Shown here piece after piece: positions 22,919 to 31,483 of a DNA stretch of 64,000 bases (the stretch's first letter is position 1; each line of letters starts with the position of its first letter). A model generated the notes under the pieces. The model was not told the DNA's origin, searched no databases, and saw nothing but the letters and a program-made list of their open reading frames with translations. The translations under genes were made by a program, and so were the position numbers. The DNA lies in the NCBI GenBank assembly GCA_010909165.1, contig MU008172.1, forward strand, positions 682,001 to 746,000. The letters run 5' to 3'. This DNA comes from Anthoceros angustus. Its lineage: Eukaryota; Plantae; Anthocerotophyta.

Positions 22919-25185
22919 ATGGAGGAGGTCGATGGTCGTCCACCTCCCAACTCCAAGGCAGTGGCCCCCGCGTTGGTAGCCCTACCACCTTCCGGGCGAT
23001 TCGTGGTGGTCGCTATTGGGGCTGCTCTTCGTGTCTTCGATCTCGTGTAACAATTCTCGACTTTAACCTATGGTGGAGTGTATTTTTGGAGGCGATGGAG
23101 GGTGCCAGTTTGGGTGACCAGCGTGTTGTGGCAGTGATAACGTGGCTGTCTCCTGCCAAGATGATTCTGTCCCTGCTCTACATTGGGATGCCATTCGAGC
23201 TATTTCCTTCAGCAGGAACGGCAAGCTTTTCGCATCCGCAGGTGATGACAAGCTTGTCAAGCTGTGGGACGCTTCTTCATGGCACTGCCTCAAGACGCTG
23301 TTAGTTTGTCCCCCTCGCTCTCAGCAATTTTCTCCTAGGGTTCCAAGGGGGACTTAAGTGTTTGCCCTGATTATCTTTTGTGGCGTTGGATCAGACGGCT
23401 TAACAAGAAAGTGAGTGCTGTCGCCTTCAGCCATGACTGCTCCTGGCTCATGTTTGCGGACAAGTTTGGTGTGGTGTATGTCACTTCCACGGGCGCGCAG
23501 ACTGCCACTGCCGCACAGGGCGCACCTAGGCAACTGCTGGCTCACTGTTGCAGCATTATCACTGGCCTGGTAGGCAAACTCAGGAAGAGCTCGTAATTGG
23601 CTGAAGTCAGGTGTGCTTAGTACCTGTGTGGTTGGAGATGCTGCCATCTAGGACTCGGTCACCGTGGTTGCTGAGTGTTTCATGTCCAGGGCTTTGTATA
23701 ATGCTCACGATGTCATGTCTGTCTTGTAGGAGAGCTCACCGGATGGGAAGTTTGTAGCCACGTCTGATCGAGATTTCAAGATACGAGTACGTTTCATCAG
23801 TCAGGATTTATCCTAGGGCATGTGCTCTCCTCACAGCAGGGTGTATTGTGCGCTTGTTTCATTTTGTGCGTCTGACTTCCATCCAGGTCAGCCTCTTTCC
23901 CAGAGATCCTCCAGCCGGGGCGCATGAAATAAATTCCTACTGTTTAGGACACACGAGGTACATCCTTGTACATATTTTCGTGGGGACATTGTCTACTTGC
24001 ATCAAGTAGTTAGCTGTTACCGTATTACTGAGATCTTCTGCAGCTTCGTGTCTTGTATTGCATTTGTAGGAGGGCAGGGTTCTCAATGTCTAGTATCTGG
24101 CGGCGGTGATGGAACGGTGGGTGTTTTGTGGTGAGGCTGGCTCCATGTCACAGTTGCTCCAGTGATCTGGCTGAGTCTTGTAGTCATTGCATGTGGCAGG
24201 TACGATTGTGGCAGCATACAACTGGCAAACTGCTGGATGTCTATCAAACTAACCAAGAGGTTCGAGACGTGTTACCAAAGGCTGTTATCTGTAAAGGCTT
24301 AGATGTTGGTTCGGTGACCTTGCTTAAGACAGGCAGGCCTTCAATCTCATGGCATGACGGGTATCCCCCTTTTGAGCTTTGAAGGCAGGAACAGACACGC
24401 ACGGAGTTCAGAATGAAGAGCAGGACGTGACACAGGCCATCCATGCGATTTCTGTCTCTCATGAGGGTTCCGTGGTGGCAGCAACTGGAGAAAGGTGATT
24501 CACGAGAAACCTTTGTTCCTGTACCTTGGAGGTTCGAAACATGTCAAGTGTCTGGATGACAAATTTGGAACATGCATACGTGCAGGTTGGAAGGAATCAT
24601 CTTGCTTAGGTGTGATCCCGCACTGGGTAAACTTTCCTATATGAAGGTACGCTTCCTAAACGGTGATAGGATCAAGCGTGTTTGAGGCACAGTGAGCGAC
24701 CGTGTAAACCAACTGTCTCGGCTTGTTTGCTGCAGACGGTTGCGTCGACAGAGCGAATCTGCCCCACCAGCCTGGCTTTTGATCCTGAGGGCCGACTTTG
24801 GCTTGTAGCTGGGGCTGCAGCAACTGTGGAGACAGGTGACGAGTTTGTTACGCCAGAGGCTGCAGCCATAGCCGAGGCCAAAGGAAAAGCTATTGCGGCA
24901 TCTGCCACTTGTTGTGTCGACGTTGTGCACACCACCAGTTTGGCGAACAACGACGCAGGGAGCGACGAGGGAGAGGAGGAATCGAGTATTGCTGTTCCAG
25001 GGGGCCAAGCGCTTCTGGACTGTTTGCAAGGCAACAGGATAGTTGGTGCAGCTGAAACTGCCCAAGCTGCTGAAGCAGCCGAGCTGGCCATGAAGAATTT
25101 GCTGTCCAAGCGACAATACTCGGTGCAACAAAGAGAGCACCGAAAACGTTTGCGCAATGATAAAAGGTTATCAAGCAAAAGCTGA
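22919..25185 (+). CDS. TRM82: WD40 non-catalytic subunit of tRNA m7G46 methyltransferase (TRM82/WDR4), multi-exon
   Basis: MEEVDG...VAPALVAL...ALRVFDL; IRAISFSRNGKLFASAGDDKLVKLWD; MFADKFGVVYV; LLAHCCSIIT; SDRDFKIRV; GAHEINSYCLGHT; SGGGDGTVRLW; C-terminal KNLLSKRQYS..REHRKRLRNDK. Confidence 0.92.
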
Positions 25186-25929
25186 TTTTGCCTTTTGTTT
25201 GAAACCCATCTACCTAGGCTAGCATGATGGAATTGCGCGTTTGGTAGTTGGGGCTTGGAATTGTGGGCTGAAAAGTCTGGCATCTTTCCTTGTTGGGGCA
25301 CTCAATTTGTTGTAACAAGGAAGTGACCGAGTCCTTCCGCCTGCTCCGTAGAAAGGGTCTTTGTTGTCTTCTTCGGTCCTGCCGTTATTAACCAGTACTG
25401 CCTTACTGGCCCACACTTCAGATGTGCCACATGACCATGGCTTGGTTGGGCAGCGAGCTGATCCAGGTGGGGGGCGGCTGTGCCGGCAACGCCGGCCTGC
25501 AGGCTGCCGGGCAGGCGCGACAGCCTCCGCCTTCAGTTGTACTCTACGCGGGGTTTTGTGCTGCATCCGTTTGCGGAGATAGGTGTAAGTAGGAGCCAAG
25601 CCGAGCCGATCCAAGCCGGGCCGTGCACAGGCGCTTGGAATTCCGGTGCCTTGGCACATCGTTGCAATTCGCGCACGAGCGTTTTGCAGTTCACCCGGAA
25701 ATGACAAGGTGACACGCAATTTGCCTCATCTGCAGTCCATCGCGAGCTCGTTGGGTGAGTCACGGACGCACTTCCGGCCCACGTACGGAGATCCCACCAG
25801 GGATCGCGGATAAGCCCAGCAGCAGTCTTTCACTGGAGTGAGGCTCTGCTTTTGGGTCGTCGCAGGAGCTTATGTAGCCTGTCTTGCCTTCCTTGCAGCA
25901 AGGGAGGACTCGGAGGTTCCAACTTTGCG

Positions 25930-28367
25930 ATGGCGGATGAGATTCATTCCGCTGTCACCGTGAATGGGGACTATCAGCATGGCCATGGTCAGTCTGGTTT
26001 GCTGGAGCAATATGTCGGCCAAACGCCTGCCCAGCCTCATCATCCGCCTCACGTTGTTGCGATGCAGAAATCACGAGTGCCAGGAAATCCTTGTGGGGGA
26101 GGTTTGCGGACACATGGCTGCAGAGGAAGAAGCTTGTCTGGTGGACTATGCTGGGCGTGGTGTCTGGGATTGTGCTGGGTGGTGCGCTCTACACCGTGAA
26201 GCCATCAAATCGGGCTGTGGAGCTCATTGGTAAGGCACGAACCTGCCTGAACTTCCCTCCCTCATCACAAGTCTGGTCCTTAAATGTGTTGCTCCAGTGC
26301 GAGGCTCACAGCAATTGGCTGTGATGGCCATTGGCAGGCTATCCGGGAGAGCTGATGCTGCACGCGTTGCAAGAGCTCATCTTGCCGCTCATGACGTTTG
26401 CGATCATGTCTGGTGTCTTCAGCTTGCGCCACACCCAGACAGGGTGAGATGCTAACTGCACCACGCCCACCGCCAGGGCCGCCCTTCGAGTTGTCCAGGG
26501 GTCCTTACGTTCAGCCGGCCGTTGCCTGATTTTGCAGGAGTGGGAAGATTGCCAAATGGTCCATCCTCTACTACTTCATCTCCATGATACTTGCCATCGC
26601 CGTGGGGATAATGATGGTGTTCACTGTCAAGCCAGGCCACAGCAAGCCTTTCGACGACGCTGGGCTTGGAAAGTGCAGCCGCCAGAATCAGAACTTGGTC
26701 AACTCCACTGCGTAAGTGAGCATTTCCCAACGATGGCCTGCCTGTCTTGGCGTGCACAAGCACTTGCAATCTCCAATCGTCTGACAGAGTGCATCCACAT
26801 CCTGCTGTCATGTGGCAGAAGCTCCTCCAGCACAGCCACAAACACGGTGGACTCGTTGCTGGATATTGGACGGCAGCTCATCCCTACCAACATAGTGGCT
26901 GCTGCAGCTGCCCCGAATTACTTGGGTGTCATGATGTTTGCCATCGTGTTTGCATTCTACCTCACGTCGCTGGGTCAGTTAGCTCTCTCAAGCTCAAGCT
27001 CAAGCTCAACCCTTGGCAAGGATTGCTTCTTTTTGCTGTGCTGCTGACTGCTCCAGGCCATGGGGTTTGGCAGGTCCAAGAGCGGAGCCTCTAATTCAGC
27101 TCATCGAGCTTGCTAACGACGTGATAGTGAAGATTGTAAGGCTCTGTGTCCCACCTGTCATCAGCTTGCAAGCATGTAGGTCCAGCTTGATGTGACTGGC
27201 CACCTAAACGGCGCCTGGCAGATAAACGCCGTGATCTTGACGACGCCCGTGGGGATCGCATCGCTCATCGCTGACACCATCCTGTCAGCCTGCAACCTGG
27301 GCCACCTGCTGAAGGCTCTGGGAGAGTATGTGGGCACCATCGTGGGAGCGTTTGCCGTGCACATGTTCGTGGTGCTGCCCCTCACACTGCTCTTCATGTC
27401 ACGCAAAAACCCCATCAAAGTGTTCAGGTGATGATTCACAGGCACTGCACGCAATTATGCACCACTGGCCTGCCTGTGCAAGGAGGTAGGGTTGTAACCC
27501 AAATGTGGCGTGCAGATCGTTTGTGCCAGCTTTCACCATGGGGTTCGGGACATCGTCCAGTGCTGCAACCATGCCCGTGACCATGCAGTGCGCGGAAGAC
27601 TACGGCTGTCTGAAGCACATCGTGAAATTTGTAGTACCCCTGGGCACCAACGTCAACCGCGATGGAACCGCGCTGTATGAAGCCGTGTCAGTCATCTTCG
27701 TGGCTCAGGTGTGTACACGCACATGACAACATTCATCAGACGTCAGATTGTACACTCACATCCCACATTGCACATTCCACAGACCGTGTACGATTTAGGG
27801 CTACCCTACACAAGCGACAGTGGTTTTAATCCGCATTTTGCCCTGGCAGGCACACGGGAGAGCTCTGTCCGCGGGGAATGTGATTGTCATCTCTCTCACG
27901 GCCTGCCTGGCTGCCATCGGGTCGGCTTCAATCCCGCATGCGGGCCTGGTCACATTGATCACCGTCATGCAGGTACGTCACGAGTGTTCCTTCAGTGTGT
28001 CGGTCGCGGTGGGAATGCCTCAAATTTCACTCACCCGGTCCATGGCTTTCGCAGGCAGTTGGATTTTCGGAATACATCGCCGATCTGTCCATCCTCTTTG
28101 CGGTGGACTGGCTGCTCAGCATGCTGCGCACGATCGTCAACATTTGGGGAGACGCTTGCGCCTGCGTCGTGGTCGACGCCTGGGCCAAACTCTCGGACAG
28201 GAAGCGGAATATTTCGCTCGCACACGCGGTTAGTGAAATATCGTGAGGAAAGTTCTGGGAGTTTTTTCCCTCCCTTGCCGAACACGCCATTAACTCCAGC
28301 TGTTGTTTTCTTGTGCCCTGTCCAGTCCAAGCTGGAGGAAGCCCGGGCCGGTGAAGGGCAATCATAG
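25930..28367 (+). CDS. SLC1/DAACS (sodium:dicarboxylate symporter family, GltPh/EAAT fold) transporter, multi-exon
   Basis: Spliced product contains YPGELML..LILPL, YYFISM, LIPTNIVAA, NYLGVMMFAIVF, TPVGIASLIA, HP1 FGTSSSAATMPVT, TM7 LGTNVNRDGTALYE, HP2 AAIGSASIPHAGLVT, TM8 AVDWLLSMLRTIVNIWGD. First intron ~25988-26067; last intron 28229-28325 (in-frame); the unspliced alternative stops at 28246. Confidence 0.93.
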
Positions 28368-29312
28368 GAGGAGAGTGATGGACCATCCTCTAGGTGTTCG
28401 TGTTCCGATTTCACTCACGTATTGGACAGGCCTTCTCCTTCTTGTTCCGAGCACGCTTCACATTTGTGACTAGCCGCCAAGCCGCCAGAAGGACTAGGGA
28501 CTTACTCGGTTTGAAAGCTCGCCCTCGCTCTACGATGTGCATTTGTACATAGACCTAACGCCCGGCCCCTGCACATATAGGTAGGTCATGGATTTGTAGA
28601 AAAAATGAATCTGAAGAAAGGAAAAGGCTGGCAAGGCCTTTCCTCCCGCCGCAGACGCACTGCTGGTTGGTGCGCCTATTTTTGACATGTTGGTGGCGTC
28701 AGGAAGCCGAGCCGAGCCTGTTCCCTTGAACCCCTTCTAGCCAGTTGCGCCCGACCCGACCGGCAACGCCGGCAGGGACGAAGCTTCCACAGTTGGGCTT
28801 GGGCTTGGCTTTGGGACGTGCTTGGCTGTTGAATCTACTTCCTCCTTCCGCTTCTCGAATTGCCGCGATCCCTTTCGAGACTGGTTTTTTGCTGTCCCGC
28901 ATTGTGCTGTCCCGCATTGTAATTTGCGATTGCTGGAATTCGCAAGCTGCACATCTGTGTGAGCCTGTTGCGATCGATCATCGATCATCAGGGATGCGTT
29001 GAGCAGTCGGTGTCACCTGGACGCGGCTTCAGCGAGAGTGGTCCTGGAAGCGGGATCTGGCGCAACAGTTATGTACTTGTTCGGGCTCATTTGAAAATCG
29101 GGGCTTCTTTGTGAGCACCATCCGTACAGTGACAGCAGAGTGCGACTCCAGGCCGGGCGATGGAGCCTCCTGTGCAGCAGAAGCAGCCGGCCAGGGCGCG
29201 CGCAGTGTGCGAGGAAAGAGGGACGGGAGGCCCGGGGAACGCTGCGGAGTGACGGAATCCAGCTTGTTGCCAGCAACGGAATCCGGGAGGGGACGAGTGC
29301 ACGACCAGCAAC

Positions 29313-31483
29313 ATGGGGACGAGCTCTCTCAAGAAGAAGACGGGGATGGGATGGGGGTGGTGGGGGATTACTGTAGTTGTGGTTGTGCTTGTCATCGCTG
29401 CAGGATTGCTGGCAATGAAGTACAGTAAGAACAAGAAAAGTTCCCAAGGGGCGGAGGGCGGGGCGCTCATCCCCTACGGCTCACCCTATACGCCTCTGCC
29501 GGATCCCTCCATCAACTTCACCCAGGCTCTCGGCGTTACTCTCACCTTCTTTGACGTTCAAAAATGTACGCTTCCTTTGCTCTTGCATCTCAGGCTGGAT
29601 GCACTTGGAATCGCATTGTCCTGACCTGACCGCGTGTGCTGCTCGCTTCAGCTGGAAAACTGCCGGCGGGGCAACCAATACCTTGGAGGAATGATTCTGC
29701 CCTACAGGATGGGCAAGATGTCGGGCTAGATCTGACTGGAGGGTTGTATGATGCTGGGGATCACATCAAGTTTGGATTGCCAATGGCATACACTGGAACG
29801 GTGCTCGCCTGGGCAGTCCTGGAGTACAAGCAACAGCTGGAAGCTGCGGGGTTGCTGCCTCAGATATTGGACGCGATCCAATGGATCACGGACTTCCTCA
29901 TTAAGGCCAGCCAGACTAAGGACGCGTACTACTTTCAGGTAGGCACGCATGTCGAGATCCGGCTTCTGGCCTTGGGTGAGGGATGTGCTAATGGCTTCTT
30001 CGCTGACAGGTGGGAGATCCGCAAGCTGATCATGTTTGCTGGGTGAGAGCTGAAGATCTGGGGAACATCTCCAGGCCTTCCTATCAAGTGAACGCCTCTG
30101 CTCCAGGTGCGCTTGGTTGCTGTCACCCTTCCATACCTGACCTAGTTATGGCTGCCAAGAAGAGCGTAGGTGGAATGAATGCCATGGCCTGGACTTGGAC
30201 TGGTGTGCAGGTTCCGATGTTGCTGGGGAAGCTTCAGCCACGCTGGCAGCTGCGTCCCTCGTCTTCCGATCAGTCAACTCCTCGTACTCGCAGACCCTTC
30301 TGGATCATGCCACGCAGCTCTTCGACTTTGCTGACACATACCGGGGTGCATATAGCCGAAGTTTGTCATCGGTGGTGGAGTTCTACAACTCGACAAGCTA
30401 CGTTGATGAGCTGCTTTGGGCGTCTGCGTGGCTGTACTACGCGACAGATGACCCCAAGTATCTCAATTACGTAACGGTGACGAATGGCCTCAGGTTCGCG
30501 CAATGGGGAAACACTGGGTGGTTCAGCTGGGACGACAAGCTTCCTGGTGTCCAGGTCTGTAATAATGCCCTCCTTGGCTTCACTACAGGCAGAGACGAGT
30601 GACAACGAGACGAGACTGACTCCTTGCTGTAACAGGTTCTTCTGGCAAGGGCCCTCCTGGTGAACCCAGCTCCTGCTCAGCCAATGGACAAAACGACAAC
30701 CACGAACCTGCAGAGTTACAAGAAGACTGCAGATGCCCTCATGTGTTCTCTCCTCCCAGACTCTCCGACAGCAAGTCATAACCGCACGAAAGGTCTGTTC
30801 CTTTTTGCTTGCAACTGGTCGAAGAGGTTCCAAACTGGGCCTTTTGCTGCAACCTCACCGTCGCATTGCAACAGGCGGTATGCTGTGGATCAGCGAGTAC
30901 AACTCAGCCCAACATGCAGTGGGCTCGGCCTTCCTGACAGTAATCTACAGCGACTACCTGCTGGCCAGCAAGCAGAACGTGACCTGCTCGGGCCGGACCT
31001 TCACACCCCAACGACTGCGAGAATTCGCAACCACTCAGGTCTGACTAACTGAGCCCAGTGCCTTGTTCTTTTCCTTCCTCAGCAATGTGGCATGCGTGAA
31101 ACTCACAGTGTCAACACATGGTGGCTTGGGCTTTGCTCTGGCAGGCCACATACCTGCTGGGATCAAATGCCATGAAAAAAAGCTACCTGGTAGGATACGG
31201 AACGGACTTCCCACAGTTCGTCCATCACCGAAGCGCCTCCATCCCTTCCTACAACCACACCGCCTGCCAAGCCGGCTTCTACTTCCTCTACGTAGACCAA
31301 CCCAACCCCAACATCGCCACCGGAGCCCTGGTAGGCGGCCCCTTCCTCAACGACTCCTACACCGACTTCCGCCCCAACCACATGCAAAACGAGCCCACTA
31401 CTTACAATAGCGCGGCGCTGGCGGGCCTCCTGGCCGGCCTCTCGTCGGGCGTGGGCGTCGCCGTGCCCCCCACTTTCGCATGA
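29313..31483 (+). CDS. GH9 endo-1,4-beta-glucanase with N-terminal membrane anchor, multi-exon
   Basis: WGWWGITVVVVVLVIAAGLL TM segment, FFDVQKSGKLP, GGLYDAGDHIKFGLPMA, DELLWASAWL, FSWDDKLPG, YLVGYG...HHRSASIP, NEPTTYNSAA. Confidence 0.95.

What the first reader, a model, noticed from the sequence alone, without database searches (positions are those of the whole stretch)
25930..28367. Plant SLC1/DAACS (EAAT-fold) transporter with a rewired binding site: NMDG->NRDG and TM8 Asp->Ser, predicted dicarboxylate carrier with unusual ion coupling
Seen: TM7 reads TNVNRDGTALYE (Arg codon cgc at 27658-27660), TM8 reads AVDWLLSMLRTIVNIWGD (Ser at 28118-28120) and HP1 reads FGTSSSAAT. Established: GltPh/EAATs have an NMDG motif (M311, Na+ coupling and gating); D394 binds the substrate amino group and is Ser in the C4-dicarboxylate carrier DctA (FMSEAR); R397, N401 and D405 are otherwise conserved. 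A key Arg sits either in HP1 (GltPh R276) or TM8 (EAAT1 R477). The family is not known from Arabidopsis. Here R397/N401/D405 and the EAAT-type LYE glutamate are kept, D394 is Ser, both usual Arg sites are non-basic (S, M) and an Arg replaces M311. Inference: the protein transports malate/succinate/fumarate rather than Asp/Glu, and the Arg may act as a relocated or built-in cation. In a hornwort this would be a candidate for carbon supply to Nostoc symbionts or for C4-acid movement; that role is speculative.
Basis: partly seen in the sequence, partly recalled or inferred. Interest (0 to 1): 0.75.

Follow-up and report, generated by a model that had tools for sequence, protein, structure and literature searches.

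The report
Green-plant EAAT-like transporter with NRDG motif
This hornwort gene is real, spliced and expressed, and belongs to an unstudied branch of the glutamate-transporter family, found in green algae and non-seed plants, in which an arginine always replaces the sodium-binding methionine and the residue that holds an amino acid's amino group is lost, so substrate and ion coupling probably differ from all studied members.

Summary
An 11-exon gene (25930-28367, +) encodes a 484-aa PF00375/SLC1 protein. Spliced transcript contigs from four public runs support all ten coding introns. The Arg codon (27658-27660) is CGC, or synonymous CGT in two relatives. TM7 reads NRDG where EAAT1 has NMDG. 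TM8 reads DWLLSMLRT where EAAT1 has DWLLDRFRT.

The rewiring is not peculiar to hornworts. Hornworts, liverworts, mosses, lycophytes, ferns, Klebsormidium, Mesotaenium, Coccomyxa and Elliptochloris form one strongly supported clade. No seed plant was found in it. All 25 aligned members carry T92S, S93M, A307T, T308N and M311R (GltPh numbering). They lack both usual arginines, have Gly at D394 (Ser only in hornworts), and keep R397, T398, N401, D405 and the EAAT-type Glu.

The clade nests among eukaryotic EAAT-like proteins, far from DctA, and lacks the bacterial H+-coupling signature. I found no paper on it.

My reading (inference): a carrier of non-amino anions, most likely dicarboxylates, with the Na2 site rebuilt around a fixed arginine. 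Substrate and ions are untested. A role in Nostoc symbiosis has no support. An apparently separate NRDG lineage in Chthonomonadales bacteria keeps an intact amino-acid site, so the arginine is probably about ion coupling. The scan had not noted this before.

The parts
25899..25987 (+). Second 5' exon: end of the 5' UTR plus coding exon 1 (ATG at 25930; codons 1-19 and the first base of codon 20). It is preceded by a 5'-UTR intron at 25755-25898.
   Evidence: Spliced contigs, (joints 25753/25898 and 25986/26067, GT..AG); model.
26068..26229 (+). Coding exon 2 (TM1 region)
26338..26443 (+). Coding exon 3 (TM2; A95 where canonical members have Ser)
26538..26711 (+). Coding exon 4 (TM3). S124 (26581-26583) corresponds to GltPh T92 / EAAT3 T101. 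M125 (26584-26586) corresponds to S93 / T102, a Na3-site position.
26819..26973 (+). Coding exon 5
27074..27135 (+). Coding exon 6
27222..27427 (+). Coding exon 7
27516..27708 (+). Coding exon 8: HP1 and TM7. S321 (27553-27555) = GltPh R276 position. A324 (27562-27564) = S279. T352/N353 (27646-27651) = A307/T308. N-R-D-G at 27655-27666, with R356 = CGC at 27658-27660. T359 = T314. Y362 and E363 (27676-27681).
   Evidence: (82 bits to PF00375).
27850..27972 (+). Coding exon 9: HP2. The tip reads G-S-A-S-I-P-H-A-G (S399 where canonical members have Gly/Ala; H402).
28055..28228 (+). Coding exon 10: TM8. D431; S435 (28118-28120) = D394 position; M436 = EAAT1 R477 / EAAT3 R445 position; R438 = R397; T439; N442 = N401; D446 = D405.
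28326..28367 (+). Coding exon 11 (13 codons plus stop TAG at 28365-28367). The 3' UTR continues at least to 28700.
   Evidence: joint 28227/28325 in all four runs; the X1 contig continues to 28700 and beyond.

Best explanation
SHOWN: the locus is an intact, spliced, transcribed nuclear gene under purifying selection. It encodes a 484-aa SLC1/DAACS (PF00375) elevator-type transporter homologue. It belongs to a monophyletic, uncharacterised Viridiplantae subfamily found in trebouxiophyte and streptophyte algae, bryophytes, lycophytes and ferns, with no seed plant found. The subfamily nests inside the eukaryotic EAAT-like branch.

The subfamily is defined by invariant changes clustered on the Na2/Na3 sites and the NMDG hinge (GltPh numbering): T92S, S93M, A307T, T308N and M311R. 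It also lacks the HP1/TM8 'mobile' arginine and the amino-group ligand D394, which is Gly in most members and Ser in hornworts. It keeps the two carboxylate ligands (R397, N401/T398), Na1 (D405, N310), D312 and the EAAT proton-acceptor Glu.

INFERRED mechanism: the site can no longer hold an alpha-amino group but can still clamp two carboxylates. The substrate is therefore most likely a non-amino dicarboxylate (C4-dicarboxylate-like) or a similar organic anion. The invariant arginine replaces the Met whose sulphur ligates Na2, next to a changed T308. It most likely acts as a tethered positive charge in or beside the Na2 site. Coupling would then use fewer Na+ ions (Na1/Na3 only), perhaps with H+ through E363, rather than the canonical 3 Na+. 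The physiological role is unknown. It is a general role of non-seed green organisms, not one specific to the hornwort symbiosis.
For: Gene and expression. Family.

Clade-wide signature: 18 of the 150 best clusters read NRDG; all lie among the top 27 hits, at 65-81% identity to exon 8; residue table; clade-specific invariant positions and motif blocks; 53 NRDG sequences, all in this clade.

Phylogeny. The clade of 25 rows has SH-aLRT 100 and a stem of 1.04. It nests among the Chlamydomonas, Botryococcus, Myrmecia, Euglena, cryptophyte and Chloropicon proteins, a group that is sister to animal EAAT/ASCT.

No seed plants.

Role of D394/D444: neutral substitutions abolish acidic-amino-acid transport and permit succinate binding, and DctA has Ser there (PMC2151622).

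Role of M311 and T308: the Na2 site is built from TM7a and HP2a carbonyls plus the M311 sulphur, and T308 mutation raises the Km for Na+ and substrate (PMC4618328). Met is conserved in all known Na+-coupled SLC1 members and is Leu in H+-coupled ones (PMC8431971). The H+ signature is [T/S]92-hydrophobic, M311L, D405N and S279E (PMC12668577). I see that signature in E. coli DctA and GltP but not in this clade.

A probably independent bacterial NRDG lineage keeps D394, R397 and N401 but has lost D405. Arg at this site is therefore compatible with an intact amino-acid site and goes with remodelled ion sites.
Against: No transport, binding or localisation data exist for any member. In EAAC1, D444S/A/C mutants bind succinate but do not transport it, so loss of the Asp alone does not make a dicarboxylate carrier. 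No 3D coordinates could be inspected, so where the guanidinium sits is unknown. Charge book-keeping is ambiguous: the pocket gains only +1 net relative to EAATs or GltPh, because the other arginine is lost. Na+-coupled uptake is unusual for land-plant plasma membranes. The AU test does not formally reject a common origin of the plant and bacterial NRDG groups (p = 0.075).
Confidence: 0.45

Rival explanations
1. The arginine is a substrate ligand rather than an ion surrogate. With D394 and (in most members) T314 shrunk to Gly/Ala, the pocket is larger and carries two arginines. The substrate would then be a bulkier or more negative anion, such as a tricarboxylate (citrate, isocitrate), a keto- or hydroxy-dicarboxylate, or a phospho- or sulfo-organic acid, and Na2 may be retained.
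For: Net pocket charge rises. D394 becomes G/S/A/C and T314 becomes A in most members. The M311 side chain makes van der Waals contact with bound aspartate in GltPh-type structures.
Against: The bacterial NRDG lineage keeps the complete aspartate-type site with the same Arg, so Arg does not require an altered substrate. The co-invariant T308N and A307T changes sit on the Na2 site rather than on the substrate.
Confidence: 0.2
2. It still carries amino acids (acidic or neutral) in a non-canonical pose. The arginine merely takes over the structural or gating role of the lost HP1/TM8 arginine (a 'relocated arginine').
For: Both usual arginine positions are non-basic (S/A and M) in every clade member, while an Arg appears at 311. 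Public annotations call these proteins 'amino acid transporter' or 'EAAT4-like', though those names are automatic.
Against: Every aligned EAAT/ASCT-type and prokaryotic homologue, plus E. coli GltP and SstT, keeps Asp at D394; the one exception is an insect EAAT1-like protein with Asn. E. coli DctA has Ser. Neutral D444 mutants do not transport amino acids. Several canonical members have neither arginine yet keep Met311 and D394, so loss of that arginine does not by itself call for a replacement.
Confidence: 0.15
3. It is mainly an anion channel or a ligand sensor (transceptor) rather than a concentrative carrier. Built-in charge would lock the binding site in a 'Na-bound-like' state.
For: EAATs carry an uncoupled anion conductance (established knowledge; see also the title and abstract of PMC4924932 listed). 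The bacterial NRDG proteins are fused to an anti-sigma-type zf-HC2 domain, which suggests sensing.
Against: The plant proteins have no added signalling domain. All elevator-transport elements are conserved under strong purifying selection. The zf-HC2 fusion is bacterial only.
Confidence: 0.1
4. It is a hornwort-specific adaptation that supplies C4 acids to Nostoc symbionts or moves C4 acids for the carbon-concentrating mechanism.
For: Only the inferred dicarboxylate preference. Hornworts alone have Ser at the D394 position.
Against: The same signature occurs in mosses, liverworts, ferns, lycophytes and free-living algae. Published work points to sugars and a SWEET transporter as the carbon supply, and neither symbiosis study read here mentions such a carrier.
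Confidence: 0.05

Closest known systems
Animal EAAT1-5 / ASCT1-2 (SLC1A1-7)
   Same: Same Pfam family, and the closest solved structures (exon 8 to EAAT1, E = 1.3e-15). The clade belongs to a eukaryotic branch that is sister to the animal proteins in the tree. It shares HP1 SSS, N310, D312, the Y-E of 'LYE' (proton-acceptor Glu), HP2 I-P-x-A-G, and TM8 D-W...R-T..N..G-D. Identity is 31-35%.
   Different: Met of NMDG is Arg. D444 (amino-group ligand) is Ser/Gly. R445/R477 is Met. T101/T102 are S/M. A-T before the motif is T-N. The HP2 tip Gly is Ser. Not found in seed plants. No functional data.
GltPh / GltTk (archaeal Na+:aspartate symporters)
   Same: Fold-defining motifs and the ligands R397, T398, N401, D405, N310, D312 and Y317 are conserved.
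   Different: R276, S279, T308, M311, S93 and D394 are all replaced. GltPh has Gln where this protein has the EAAT-type Glu.
E. coli DctA (C4-dicarboxylate:H+ symporter)
   Same: Non-acidic residue at the D394 position (Ser in DctA and in hornworts), with the R397-equivalent arginine and N401 kept. This is the basis of the dicarboxylate inference.
   Different: Only 25% identical. Far below the NCBIfam DctA cut-off (177 against 513 bits for the clade relatives scanned). Distant in the tree. DctA has the H+ signature (V92, E279, L311, N405) plus E395 and A398; the plant clade has S, A, R, D, M, T. Most clade members have Gly, not Ser.
Chthonomonadales (Armatimonadota) NRDG proteins, found here
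   Same: PF00375 proteins that also read N-R-D-G-T-A-L-Y in TM7.
   Different: About 26% identical. They keep D394, the TM8 arginine, R397 and N401. D405 is replaced by His or Gly. Four of the six carry an N-terminal extension, and both extended ORFs scanned hold a zf-HC2 domain. They lie apart from the plant clade in the tree: two changes of state are needed, and the AU test of one joint clade gives p = 0.075.
LeuT-fold carriers with a basic side chain in the Na2 site (ApcT Lys158, CaiT Arg262). Analogy recalled from my own knowledge, not tested here.
   Same: The concept of a tethered positive charge replacing a coupling Na+.
   Different: Unrelated fold and family. The analogy is a lead, not evidence.

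Membership tests
SLC1 / DAACS (Pfam PF00375 SDF, TC 2.A.23) | Significant, colinear match to the SDF profile over the transport and scaffold domains | tested here: met
   six of the eight exon pieces scanned match profile positions 63-387 in order; the two most N-terminal pieces (exons 2 and 3) gave no match. Exon 8 alone scores 82.1 bits (cut-off 27.9). Full-length relatives carry PF00375.
SLC1 / DAACS (Pfam PF00375 SDF, TC 2.A.23) | HP1 Ser-rich tip, N-x-D-G break in TM7, HP2 tip, TM8 R-T-x-x-N-x-x-G-D | tested here: met
   All are present; only the x of N-x-D-G is unusual (Arg).
SLC1 / DAACS (Pfam PF00375 SDF, TC 2.A.23) | Trimeric elevator fold | not testable with these tools
Na+-coupled acidic/neutral amino-acid transporters (EAAT/ASCT/GltPh type) | Asp at GltPh D394 / EAAT3 D444 (alpha-amino ligand) | tested here: not met
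   S435 in the window. G/S/A/C in all 25 clade members.
Na+-coupled acidic/neutral amino-acid transporters (EAAT/ASCT/GltPh type) | Met in NMDG (Na2 ligand; conserved in all known Na+-coupled members, PMC8431971) | tested here: not met
   R356, invariant in the clade.
Na+-coupled acidic/neutral amino-acid transporters (EAAT/ASCT/GltPh type) | Na1 and Na3 ligands (D405, N310, D312, T92 hydroxyl) | tested here: met
   D446, N355, D357 and S124 are present. The S93 equivalent is Met.
Na+-coupled acidic/neutral amino-acid transporters (EAAT/ASCT/GltPh type) | Phylogenetic placement with eukaryotic EAAT-like proteins | tested here: met
   nested in an algal/protist group (SH-aLRT 99) that is sister to the animal EAAT/ASCT group (99); the fork joining the two has SH-aLRT 92.
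DctA C4-dicarboxylate:H+ symporters | Score above the NCBIfam DctA model cut-off | tested here: not met
   175-178 bits against a cut-off of 513 for three clade members (Nothoceros, Diphasiastrum, Marchantia).
DctA C4-dicarboxylate:H+ symporters | Ser at the D394 position, with Glu at 395 and Ala at 398 (PMC2151622) | tested here: inconclusive
   Ser is present only in hornworts (Gly elsewhere). Positions 395 and 398 are M and T, not E and A.
DctA C4-dicarboxylate:H+ symporters | H+-coupling signature: hydrophobic residue at T92, S279E, M311L, D405N (PMC12668577) | tested here: not met
   The window has S, A, R, D. E. coli DctA and GltP show V/I, E, L, N in the same alignment.
DctA C4-dicarboxylate:H+ symporters | Transport of succinate, fumarate or malate | not testable with these tools
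   Needs uptake assays.

The most novel reading that the evidence does not exclude
The green-lineage NRDG subfamily is a third coupling state of the SLC1 family, alongside Met (Na+-coupled) and Leu (H+-coupled). A tethered arginine would permanently occupy or neutralise the Na2 site, and the amino-group ligand is deleted. The result would be a non-amino dicarboxylate carrier with reduced Na+ stoichiometry. That would be the first natural 'built-in cation' in an elevator-type glutamate-transporter homologue. It would have arisen convergently in Chthonomonadales bacteria and been lost in the ancestor of seed plants.
Probability: 0.3. Interest if true: 0.8.

Novelty: new variant of a known kind. 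Interest (0 to 1): 0.62.

Why it matters
Met311 of the NMDG motif is one of the most studied coupling residues in glutamate transporters. The literature read here states that it is Met in all known Na+-coupled members and Leu in H+-coupled ones. This clade has an invariant Arg there, spans green algae to ferns, and is expressed and under purifying selection. It combines that Arg with loss of the amino-group-binding Asp and with changes at T308, T92 and S93. It is therefore a ready-made natural experiment on how Na2 and substrate binding are coupled.

For plant biology, it shows that an EAAT-type carrier family is present throughout non-seed plants. None of the seed-plant sequences in the searched collections belongs to it, its substrate is unknown, and its automatic names ('amino acid transporter', 'EAAT4-like') are probably misleading. 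Genetic models are available for direct tests: Marchantia polymorpha (MPTK1_1g13310) and Physcomitrium patens.

Tried and rejected
1. The top hit of the exhaustive search (P0001, 4135 aa, 152 bits, '0 stretches') is a low-complexity repeat protein. It gives no BLAST alignment to the model and was discarded as spurious.

2. I looked for the window's own protein in the 5.8-billion-cluster collection, so that it could be folded by reference. It is not there; the only hornwort entry is a partial Nothoceros transcript. I did not type in the spliced protein, so no structure prediction was run. The fold tools also return no coordinates, so the position of the Arg could not have been measured anyway.

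3. DctA membership is rejected.

4. Bacterial origin of the clade is not favoured: it nests among eukaryotic sequences.

5. The Nostoc-symbiosis role has no support.

6. Literature searches for NRDG, DAACS or SLC1 in plants, EAAT together with bryophyte names, and gene identifiers of the Marchantia and Selaginella orthologues found nothing relevant. The library is open-access only, so this is not proof of absence.

7. Pfam scans of two neighbouring ORFs (24682-25182 and 29313-29621) gave nothing.

8. A one-clade test for the plant plus bacterial NRDG proteins was not decisive (p = 0.075).

9. Charge book-keeping of the pocket was considered as a way to choose between 'Na2 lost' and 'more negative substrate'. 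It was dropped as ambiguous.
Full report
**What is in the sequence.** The region 25930-28367 (+) holds an intron-rich eukaryotic gene. I assembled 11 coding exons with GT..AG introns of 80-141 nt. They give a 1455-nt reading frame and a 484-aa protein. Six of the eight exon pieces scanned match Pfam PF00375 (SDF, sodium:dicarboxylate symporter family) colinearly from profile position 63 to 387. The two most N-terminal pieces gave no match. The HP1-TM7 exon alone scores 82 bits against a cut-off of 27.9. CGC at 27658-27660 is Arg356 inside T-N-V-N-R-D-G-T-A-L-Y-E. AGC at 28118-28120 is Ser435 inside D-W-L-L-S-M-L-R-T-I-V-N-I-W-G-D. HP1 reads G-T-S-S-S-A-A-T-M-P.

Ungapped HMMER alignments to solved structures place Arg356 on the Met of NMDG, and Ser-Met on the Asp-Arg of EAAT1's D-W-L-L-D-R-F-R-T. 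The EAAT3 alignment places S124 and M125 on T101 and T102, which correspond to GltPh T92 and S93.

**Is the gene real and used?** The one sequencing-run search found a run holding 52% of the sampled words, roughly the share of the searched stretch that is exonic. Contigs of four runs were laid on the locus. One is identical to the window, and three come from relatives with a few percent of differences. All four jump every one of the ten coding introns at GT..AG, plus a 5'-UTR intron (25755-25898). They leave intron-only bins empty, so they are spliced RNA. This confirms the short 80-nt first coding intron and the last intron, and therefore the reading frame and the stop at 28365-28367.

Two relatives have CGT instead of CGC at the Arg codon, which is synonymous. 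Of the 34 listed coding differences, 27 are synonymous, and six of the seven replacements lie in the N- and C-terminal tails. Twenty-two further differences were not listed by the tool. A single copy lies in the window.

**How widespread is the rewiring?** An exhaustive search of 1.84 billion cluster representatives with the HP1-TM7 exon returned 18 clusters reading N-R-D-G. All lie among the top 27 hits, at 65-81% identity to exon 8, and many are exon-sized fragments. Most of the remaining hits read NMDG; the rest read NLDG or NADG, or carry a different residue at the Asp of the motif (for example NMNG). The top entry was a spurious low-complexity protein.

Word searches with two full-length or near-full-length relatives gave named members:
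- hornwort: Nothoceros (82% identical to the window protein);
- liverworts: Marchantia, Riccia, Calypogeia;
- mosses: Physcomitrium, Ceratodon;
- lycophytes: Selaginella, Diphasiastrum;
- ferns: Adiantum, Ceratopteris;
- streptophyte algae: Klebsormidium, Mesotaenium;
- trebouxiophytes: Coccomyxa, Elliptochloris.

No seed plant appears among the 120 and 76 listed hits, although seed-plant proteomes dominate public plant data. The window's own protein is not in that collection.

In an alignment of 25 clade members against 27 canonical homologues and E. coli DctA, GltP and SstT (taken from the annotated K-12 genome), the clade is invariant for T92S, S93M, L282M, A307T, T308N and M311R. It has Met at the EAAT1-R477 position in 24 of 25 members and Ser or Ala at the GltPh-R276 position. 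It has Ala at S279, a residue also seen in some canonical members. At D394 it has Gly in 20 of 25 members, Ser only in the two hornworts, and Ala or Cys in two paralogues. It keeps N310, D312, Y317, the EAAT-type Glu, D390, R397, T398, N401 and D405. The HP2 tip is also altered: A-S-I-P against A-G-I-P or A-A-I-P in canonical members. All 53 NRDG sequences fetched belong to this clade.

**Where does it sit in the family?** A maximum-likelihood tree (LG+C20, quick search) recovers the NRDG clade with SH-aLRT 100 on a long stem of 1.04 substitutions per site. It nests in a group of algal and protist EAAT-like proteins with canonical D-R-x-R sites: Chlamydomonas incerta, Botryococcus, Myrmecia, Euglena, cryptophytes and Chloropicon. 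That group is sister to animal EAAT/ASCT. E. coli DctA and GltP lie far away among bacteria.

Within land plants, the hornwort pair groups with a Marchantia/Riccia paralogue set (SH-aLRT 99). NCBIfam scores of three clade members for DctA (about 177 bits against a cut-off of 513) and GltP are far below threshold. So this is a vertically inherited eukaryotic lineage that lost the Asp convergently with DctA. It is not a DctA relative.

**What the changed residues do in studied members (from papers read here).**
- D444 of EAAC1 (GltPh D394) binds the amino group. D444S, D444A and D444C abolish amino-acid transport and allow succinate to bind, but succinate is not transported. DctA has Ser there, with Glu and Ala at the +1 and +4 positions (PMC2151622).
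- The N-M-D loop is the nexus of Na1, Na2, Na3 and substrate binding. The M311 side chain flips into the pocket and touches the substrate (PMC12668577).
- The Na2 cage is made of TM7a and HP2a carbonyls plus the M311 sulphur. T308 sits beside it, and its mutation raises the Km for Na+ and substrate in GltPh and EAAT3 (PMC4618328).
- The H+ signature is hydrophobic-92, M311L, D405N and S279E. My alignment shows exactly that signature in E. coli DctA and GltP and not in the plant clade.

**Interpretation.** The points above are shown; what follows is inference. The site retains both carboxylate clamps (R438, and N442/T439 with the HP1 serines) but has no acidic partner for an amino group. A non-amino dicarboxylate is therefore the most economical substrate guess. 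The tolerance of G/S/A/C at that position says the requirement is 'small and uncharged', not a DctA-like Ser hydroxyl.

The invariant changes cluster on Na2 (M311R, T308N, A307T and the HP2 tip) and on one Na3 ligand (S93M). Na1 and the rest of Na3 are intact. That pattern points to a remodelled ion stoichiometry, in which the guanidinium sits in or next to the Na2 site.

A pattern scan of 185,579 prokaryotic genomes for N-R-D-G-x-x-L-Y-[EQ]-x5-F-[IV]-A-Q found six hits, where about 0.02 are expected by chance on my own estimate. All six are in Chthonomonadales MAGs. These PF00375 proteins also read NRDG. They keep D394, the TM8 arginine, R397 and N401, and they replace the Na1 ligand D405 by His or Gly. 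They are about 26% identical to the plant protein and fall among bacterial sequences. The tree needs two changes of the Arg state. An AU test of a single joint clade gives p = 0.075, which favours separate origins but does not prove them.

If the origins are independent, this shows that Arg at the Met position is compatible with a complete aspartate-type site and goes together with loss of a Na+ ligand. That favours 'ion surrogate' over 'extra substrate ligand'. I could not inspect a 3D model.

**The proposed biological role.** Nothing supports a hornwort-specific function in feeding Nostoc or in C4-acid traffic. The signature predates land plants and occurs in lineages without the hornwort-type Nostoc symbiosis. 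The Anthoceros genome paper reports that only glucose, fructose or sucrose sustain dark nitrogen fixation, and it highlights a SWEET transporter. Neither it nor the time-course preprint mentions a dicarboxylate or SLC1 carrier. The N-terminus (45 residues, acidic, before TM1) does not look like a transit peptide. That is my reading of the sequence, not a test, and localisation is unknown.

**Novelty.** Members are deposited as 'hypothetical protein', 'Amino acid transporter', 'EAAT4-like' or 'Sodium:dicarboxylate symporter'. I found no paper that describes an NRDG motif, plant SLC1 proteins or the orthologues' gene identifiers in the open-access library. I therefore class it as a new variant of a known kind: a real, conserved, uncharacterised subfamily with an unprecedented residue at a key coupling position. 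Earlier notes of this scan only agree that the genome is probably a hornwort. The scan had not recorded this feature before.

Noticed in passing
L004:4580-6274:+, L007:3629-5401:+ (also L005, L006, L008, L009): Chthonomonadales (Armatimonadota) MAGs encode PF00375 proteins that also read NRDG in TM7. They keep the D-R-x-R-T..N amino-acid site and replace the Na1 ligand D405 by His or Gly. The two extended ORFs scanned (L004, L007) carry an N-terminal zf-HC2 (anti-sigma-factor-type) domain fused to the transporter domain, which hints at a transporter-derived sensor. No sigma-factor gene was recognised in the ORFs directly upstream in L004.
   Followed up: partly
P0038, P0029, P0048, P0030, P0044, P0247 (NMNG); P0188, P0190 (NMSG); P0191 (NMTG); P0192, P0193 (NLSG): A second green-algal, protist and archaeal set of SLC1 proteins keeps the canonical D-R-x-R site. 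It replaces the Na3 ligand D312 of N-M-D-G by Asn, Ser or Thr. This is another natural variation of the coupling motif.
   Followed up: no
P0186 (Adiantum nelumboides, 324-aa fragment): One fern fragment inside the NRDG clade reads N-L-D-G instead of N-R-D-G (a one-base change from CGN to CTN). It may be a paralogue that reverted, a pseudogene or an error.
   Followed up: no
window 25702-25713 and 25755-25898: The 5' UTR contains a 144-nt intron and a three-codon upstream ORF (ATG ACA AGG TGA). The 5' UTRs of the related species' transcripts diverge from the window here.
   Followed up: partly
window 28368-28700 and beyond; 29313-29624 (+): The identical transcript contig (3448 nt) runs about 1.3 kb past position 28700. 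So either the 3' UTR is long or the contig merges with the next gene. The ORF at 29313-29624 starts with a single hydrophobic anchor and ends in a motif that reminded me of membrane-anchored GH9 endoglucanases. Pfam gave no hit on this first exon.
   Followed up: partly
window 26985-27010 (intron 5): A short hexanucleotide microsatellite, about three to four tandem CTCAAG units, lies inside the intron.
   Followed up: no
P0001: The exhaustive protein search ranked a 4135-aa low-complexity repeat protein first (152 bits, zero stretches). This is a composition artefact and should not be read as a relative.
   Followed up: yes
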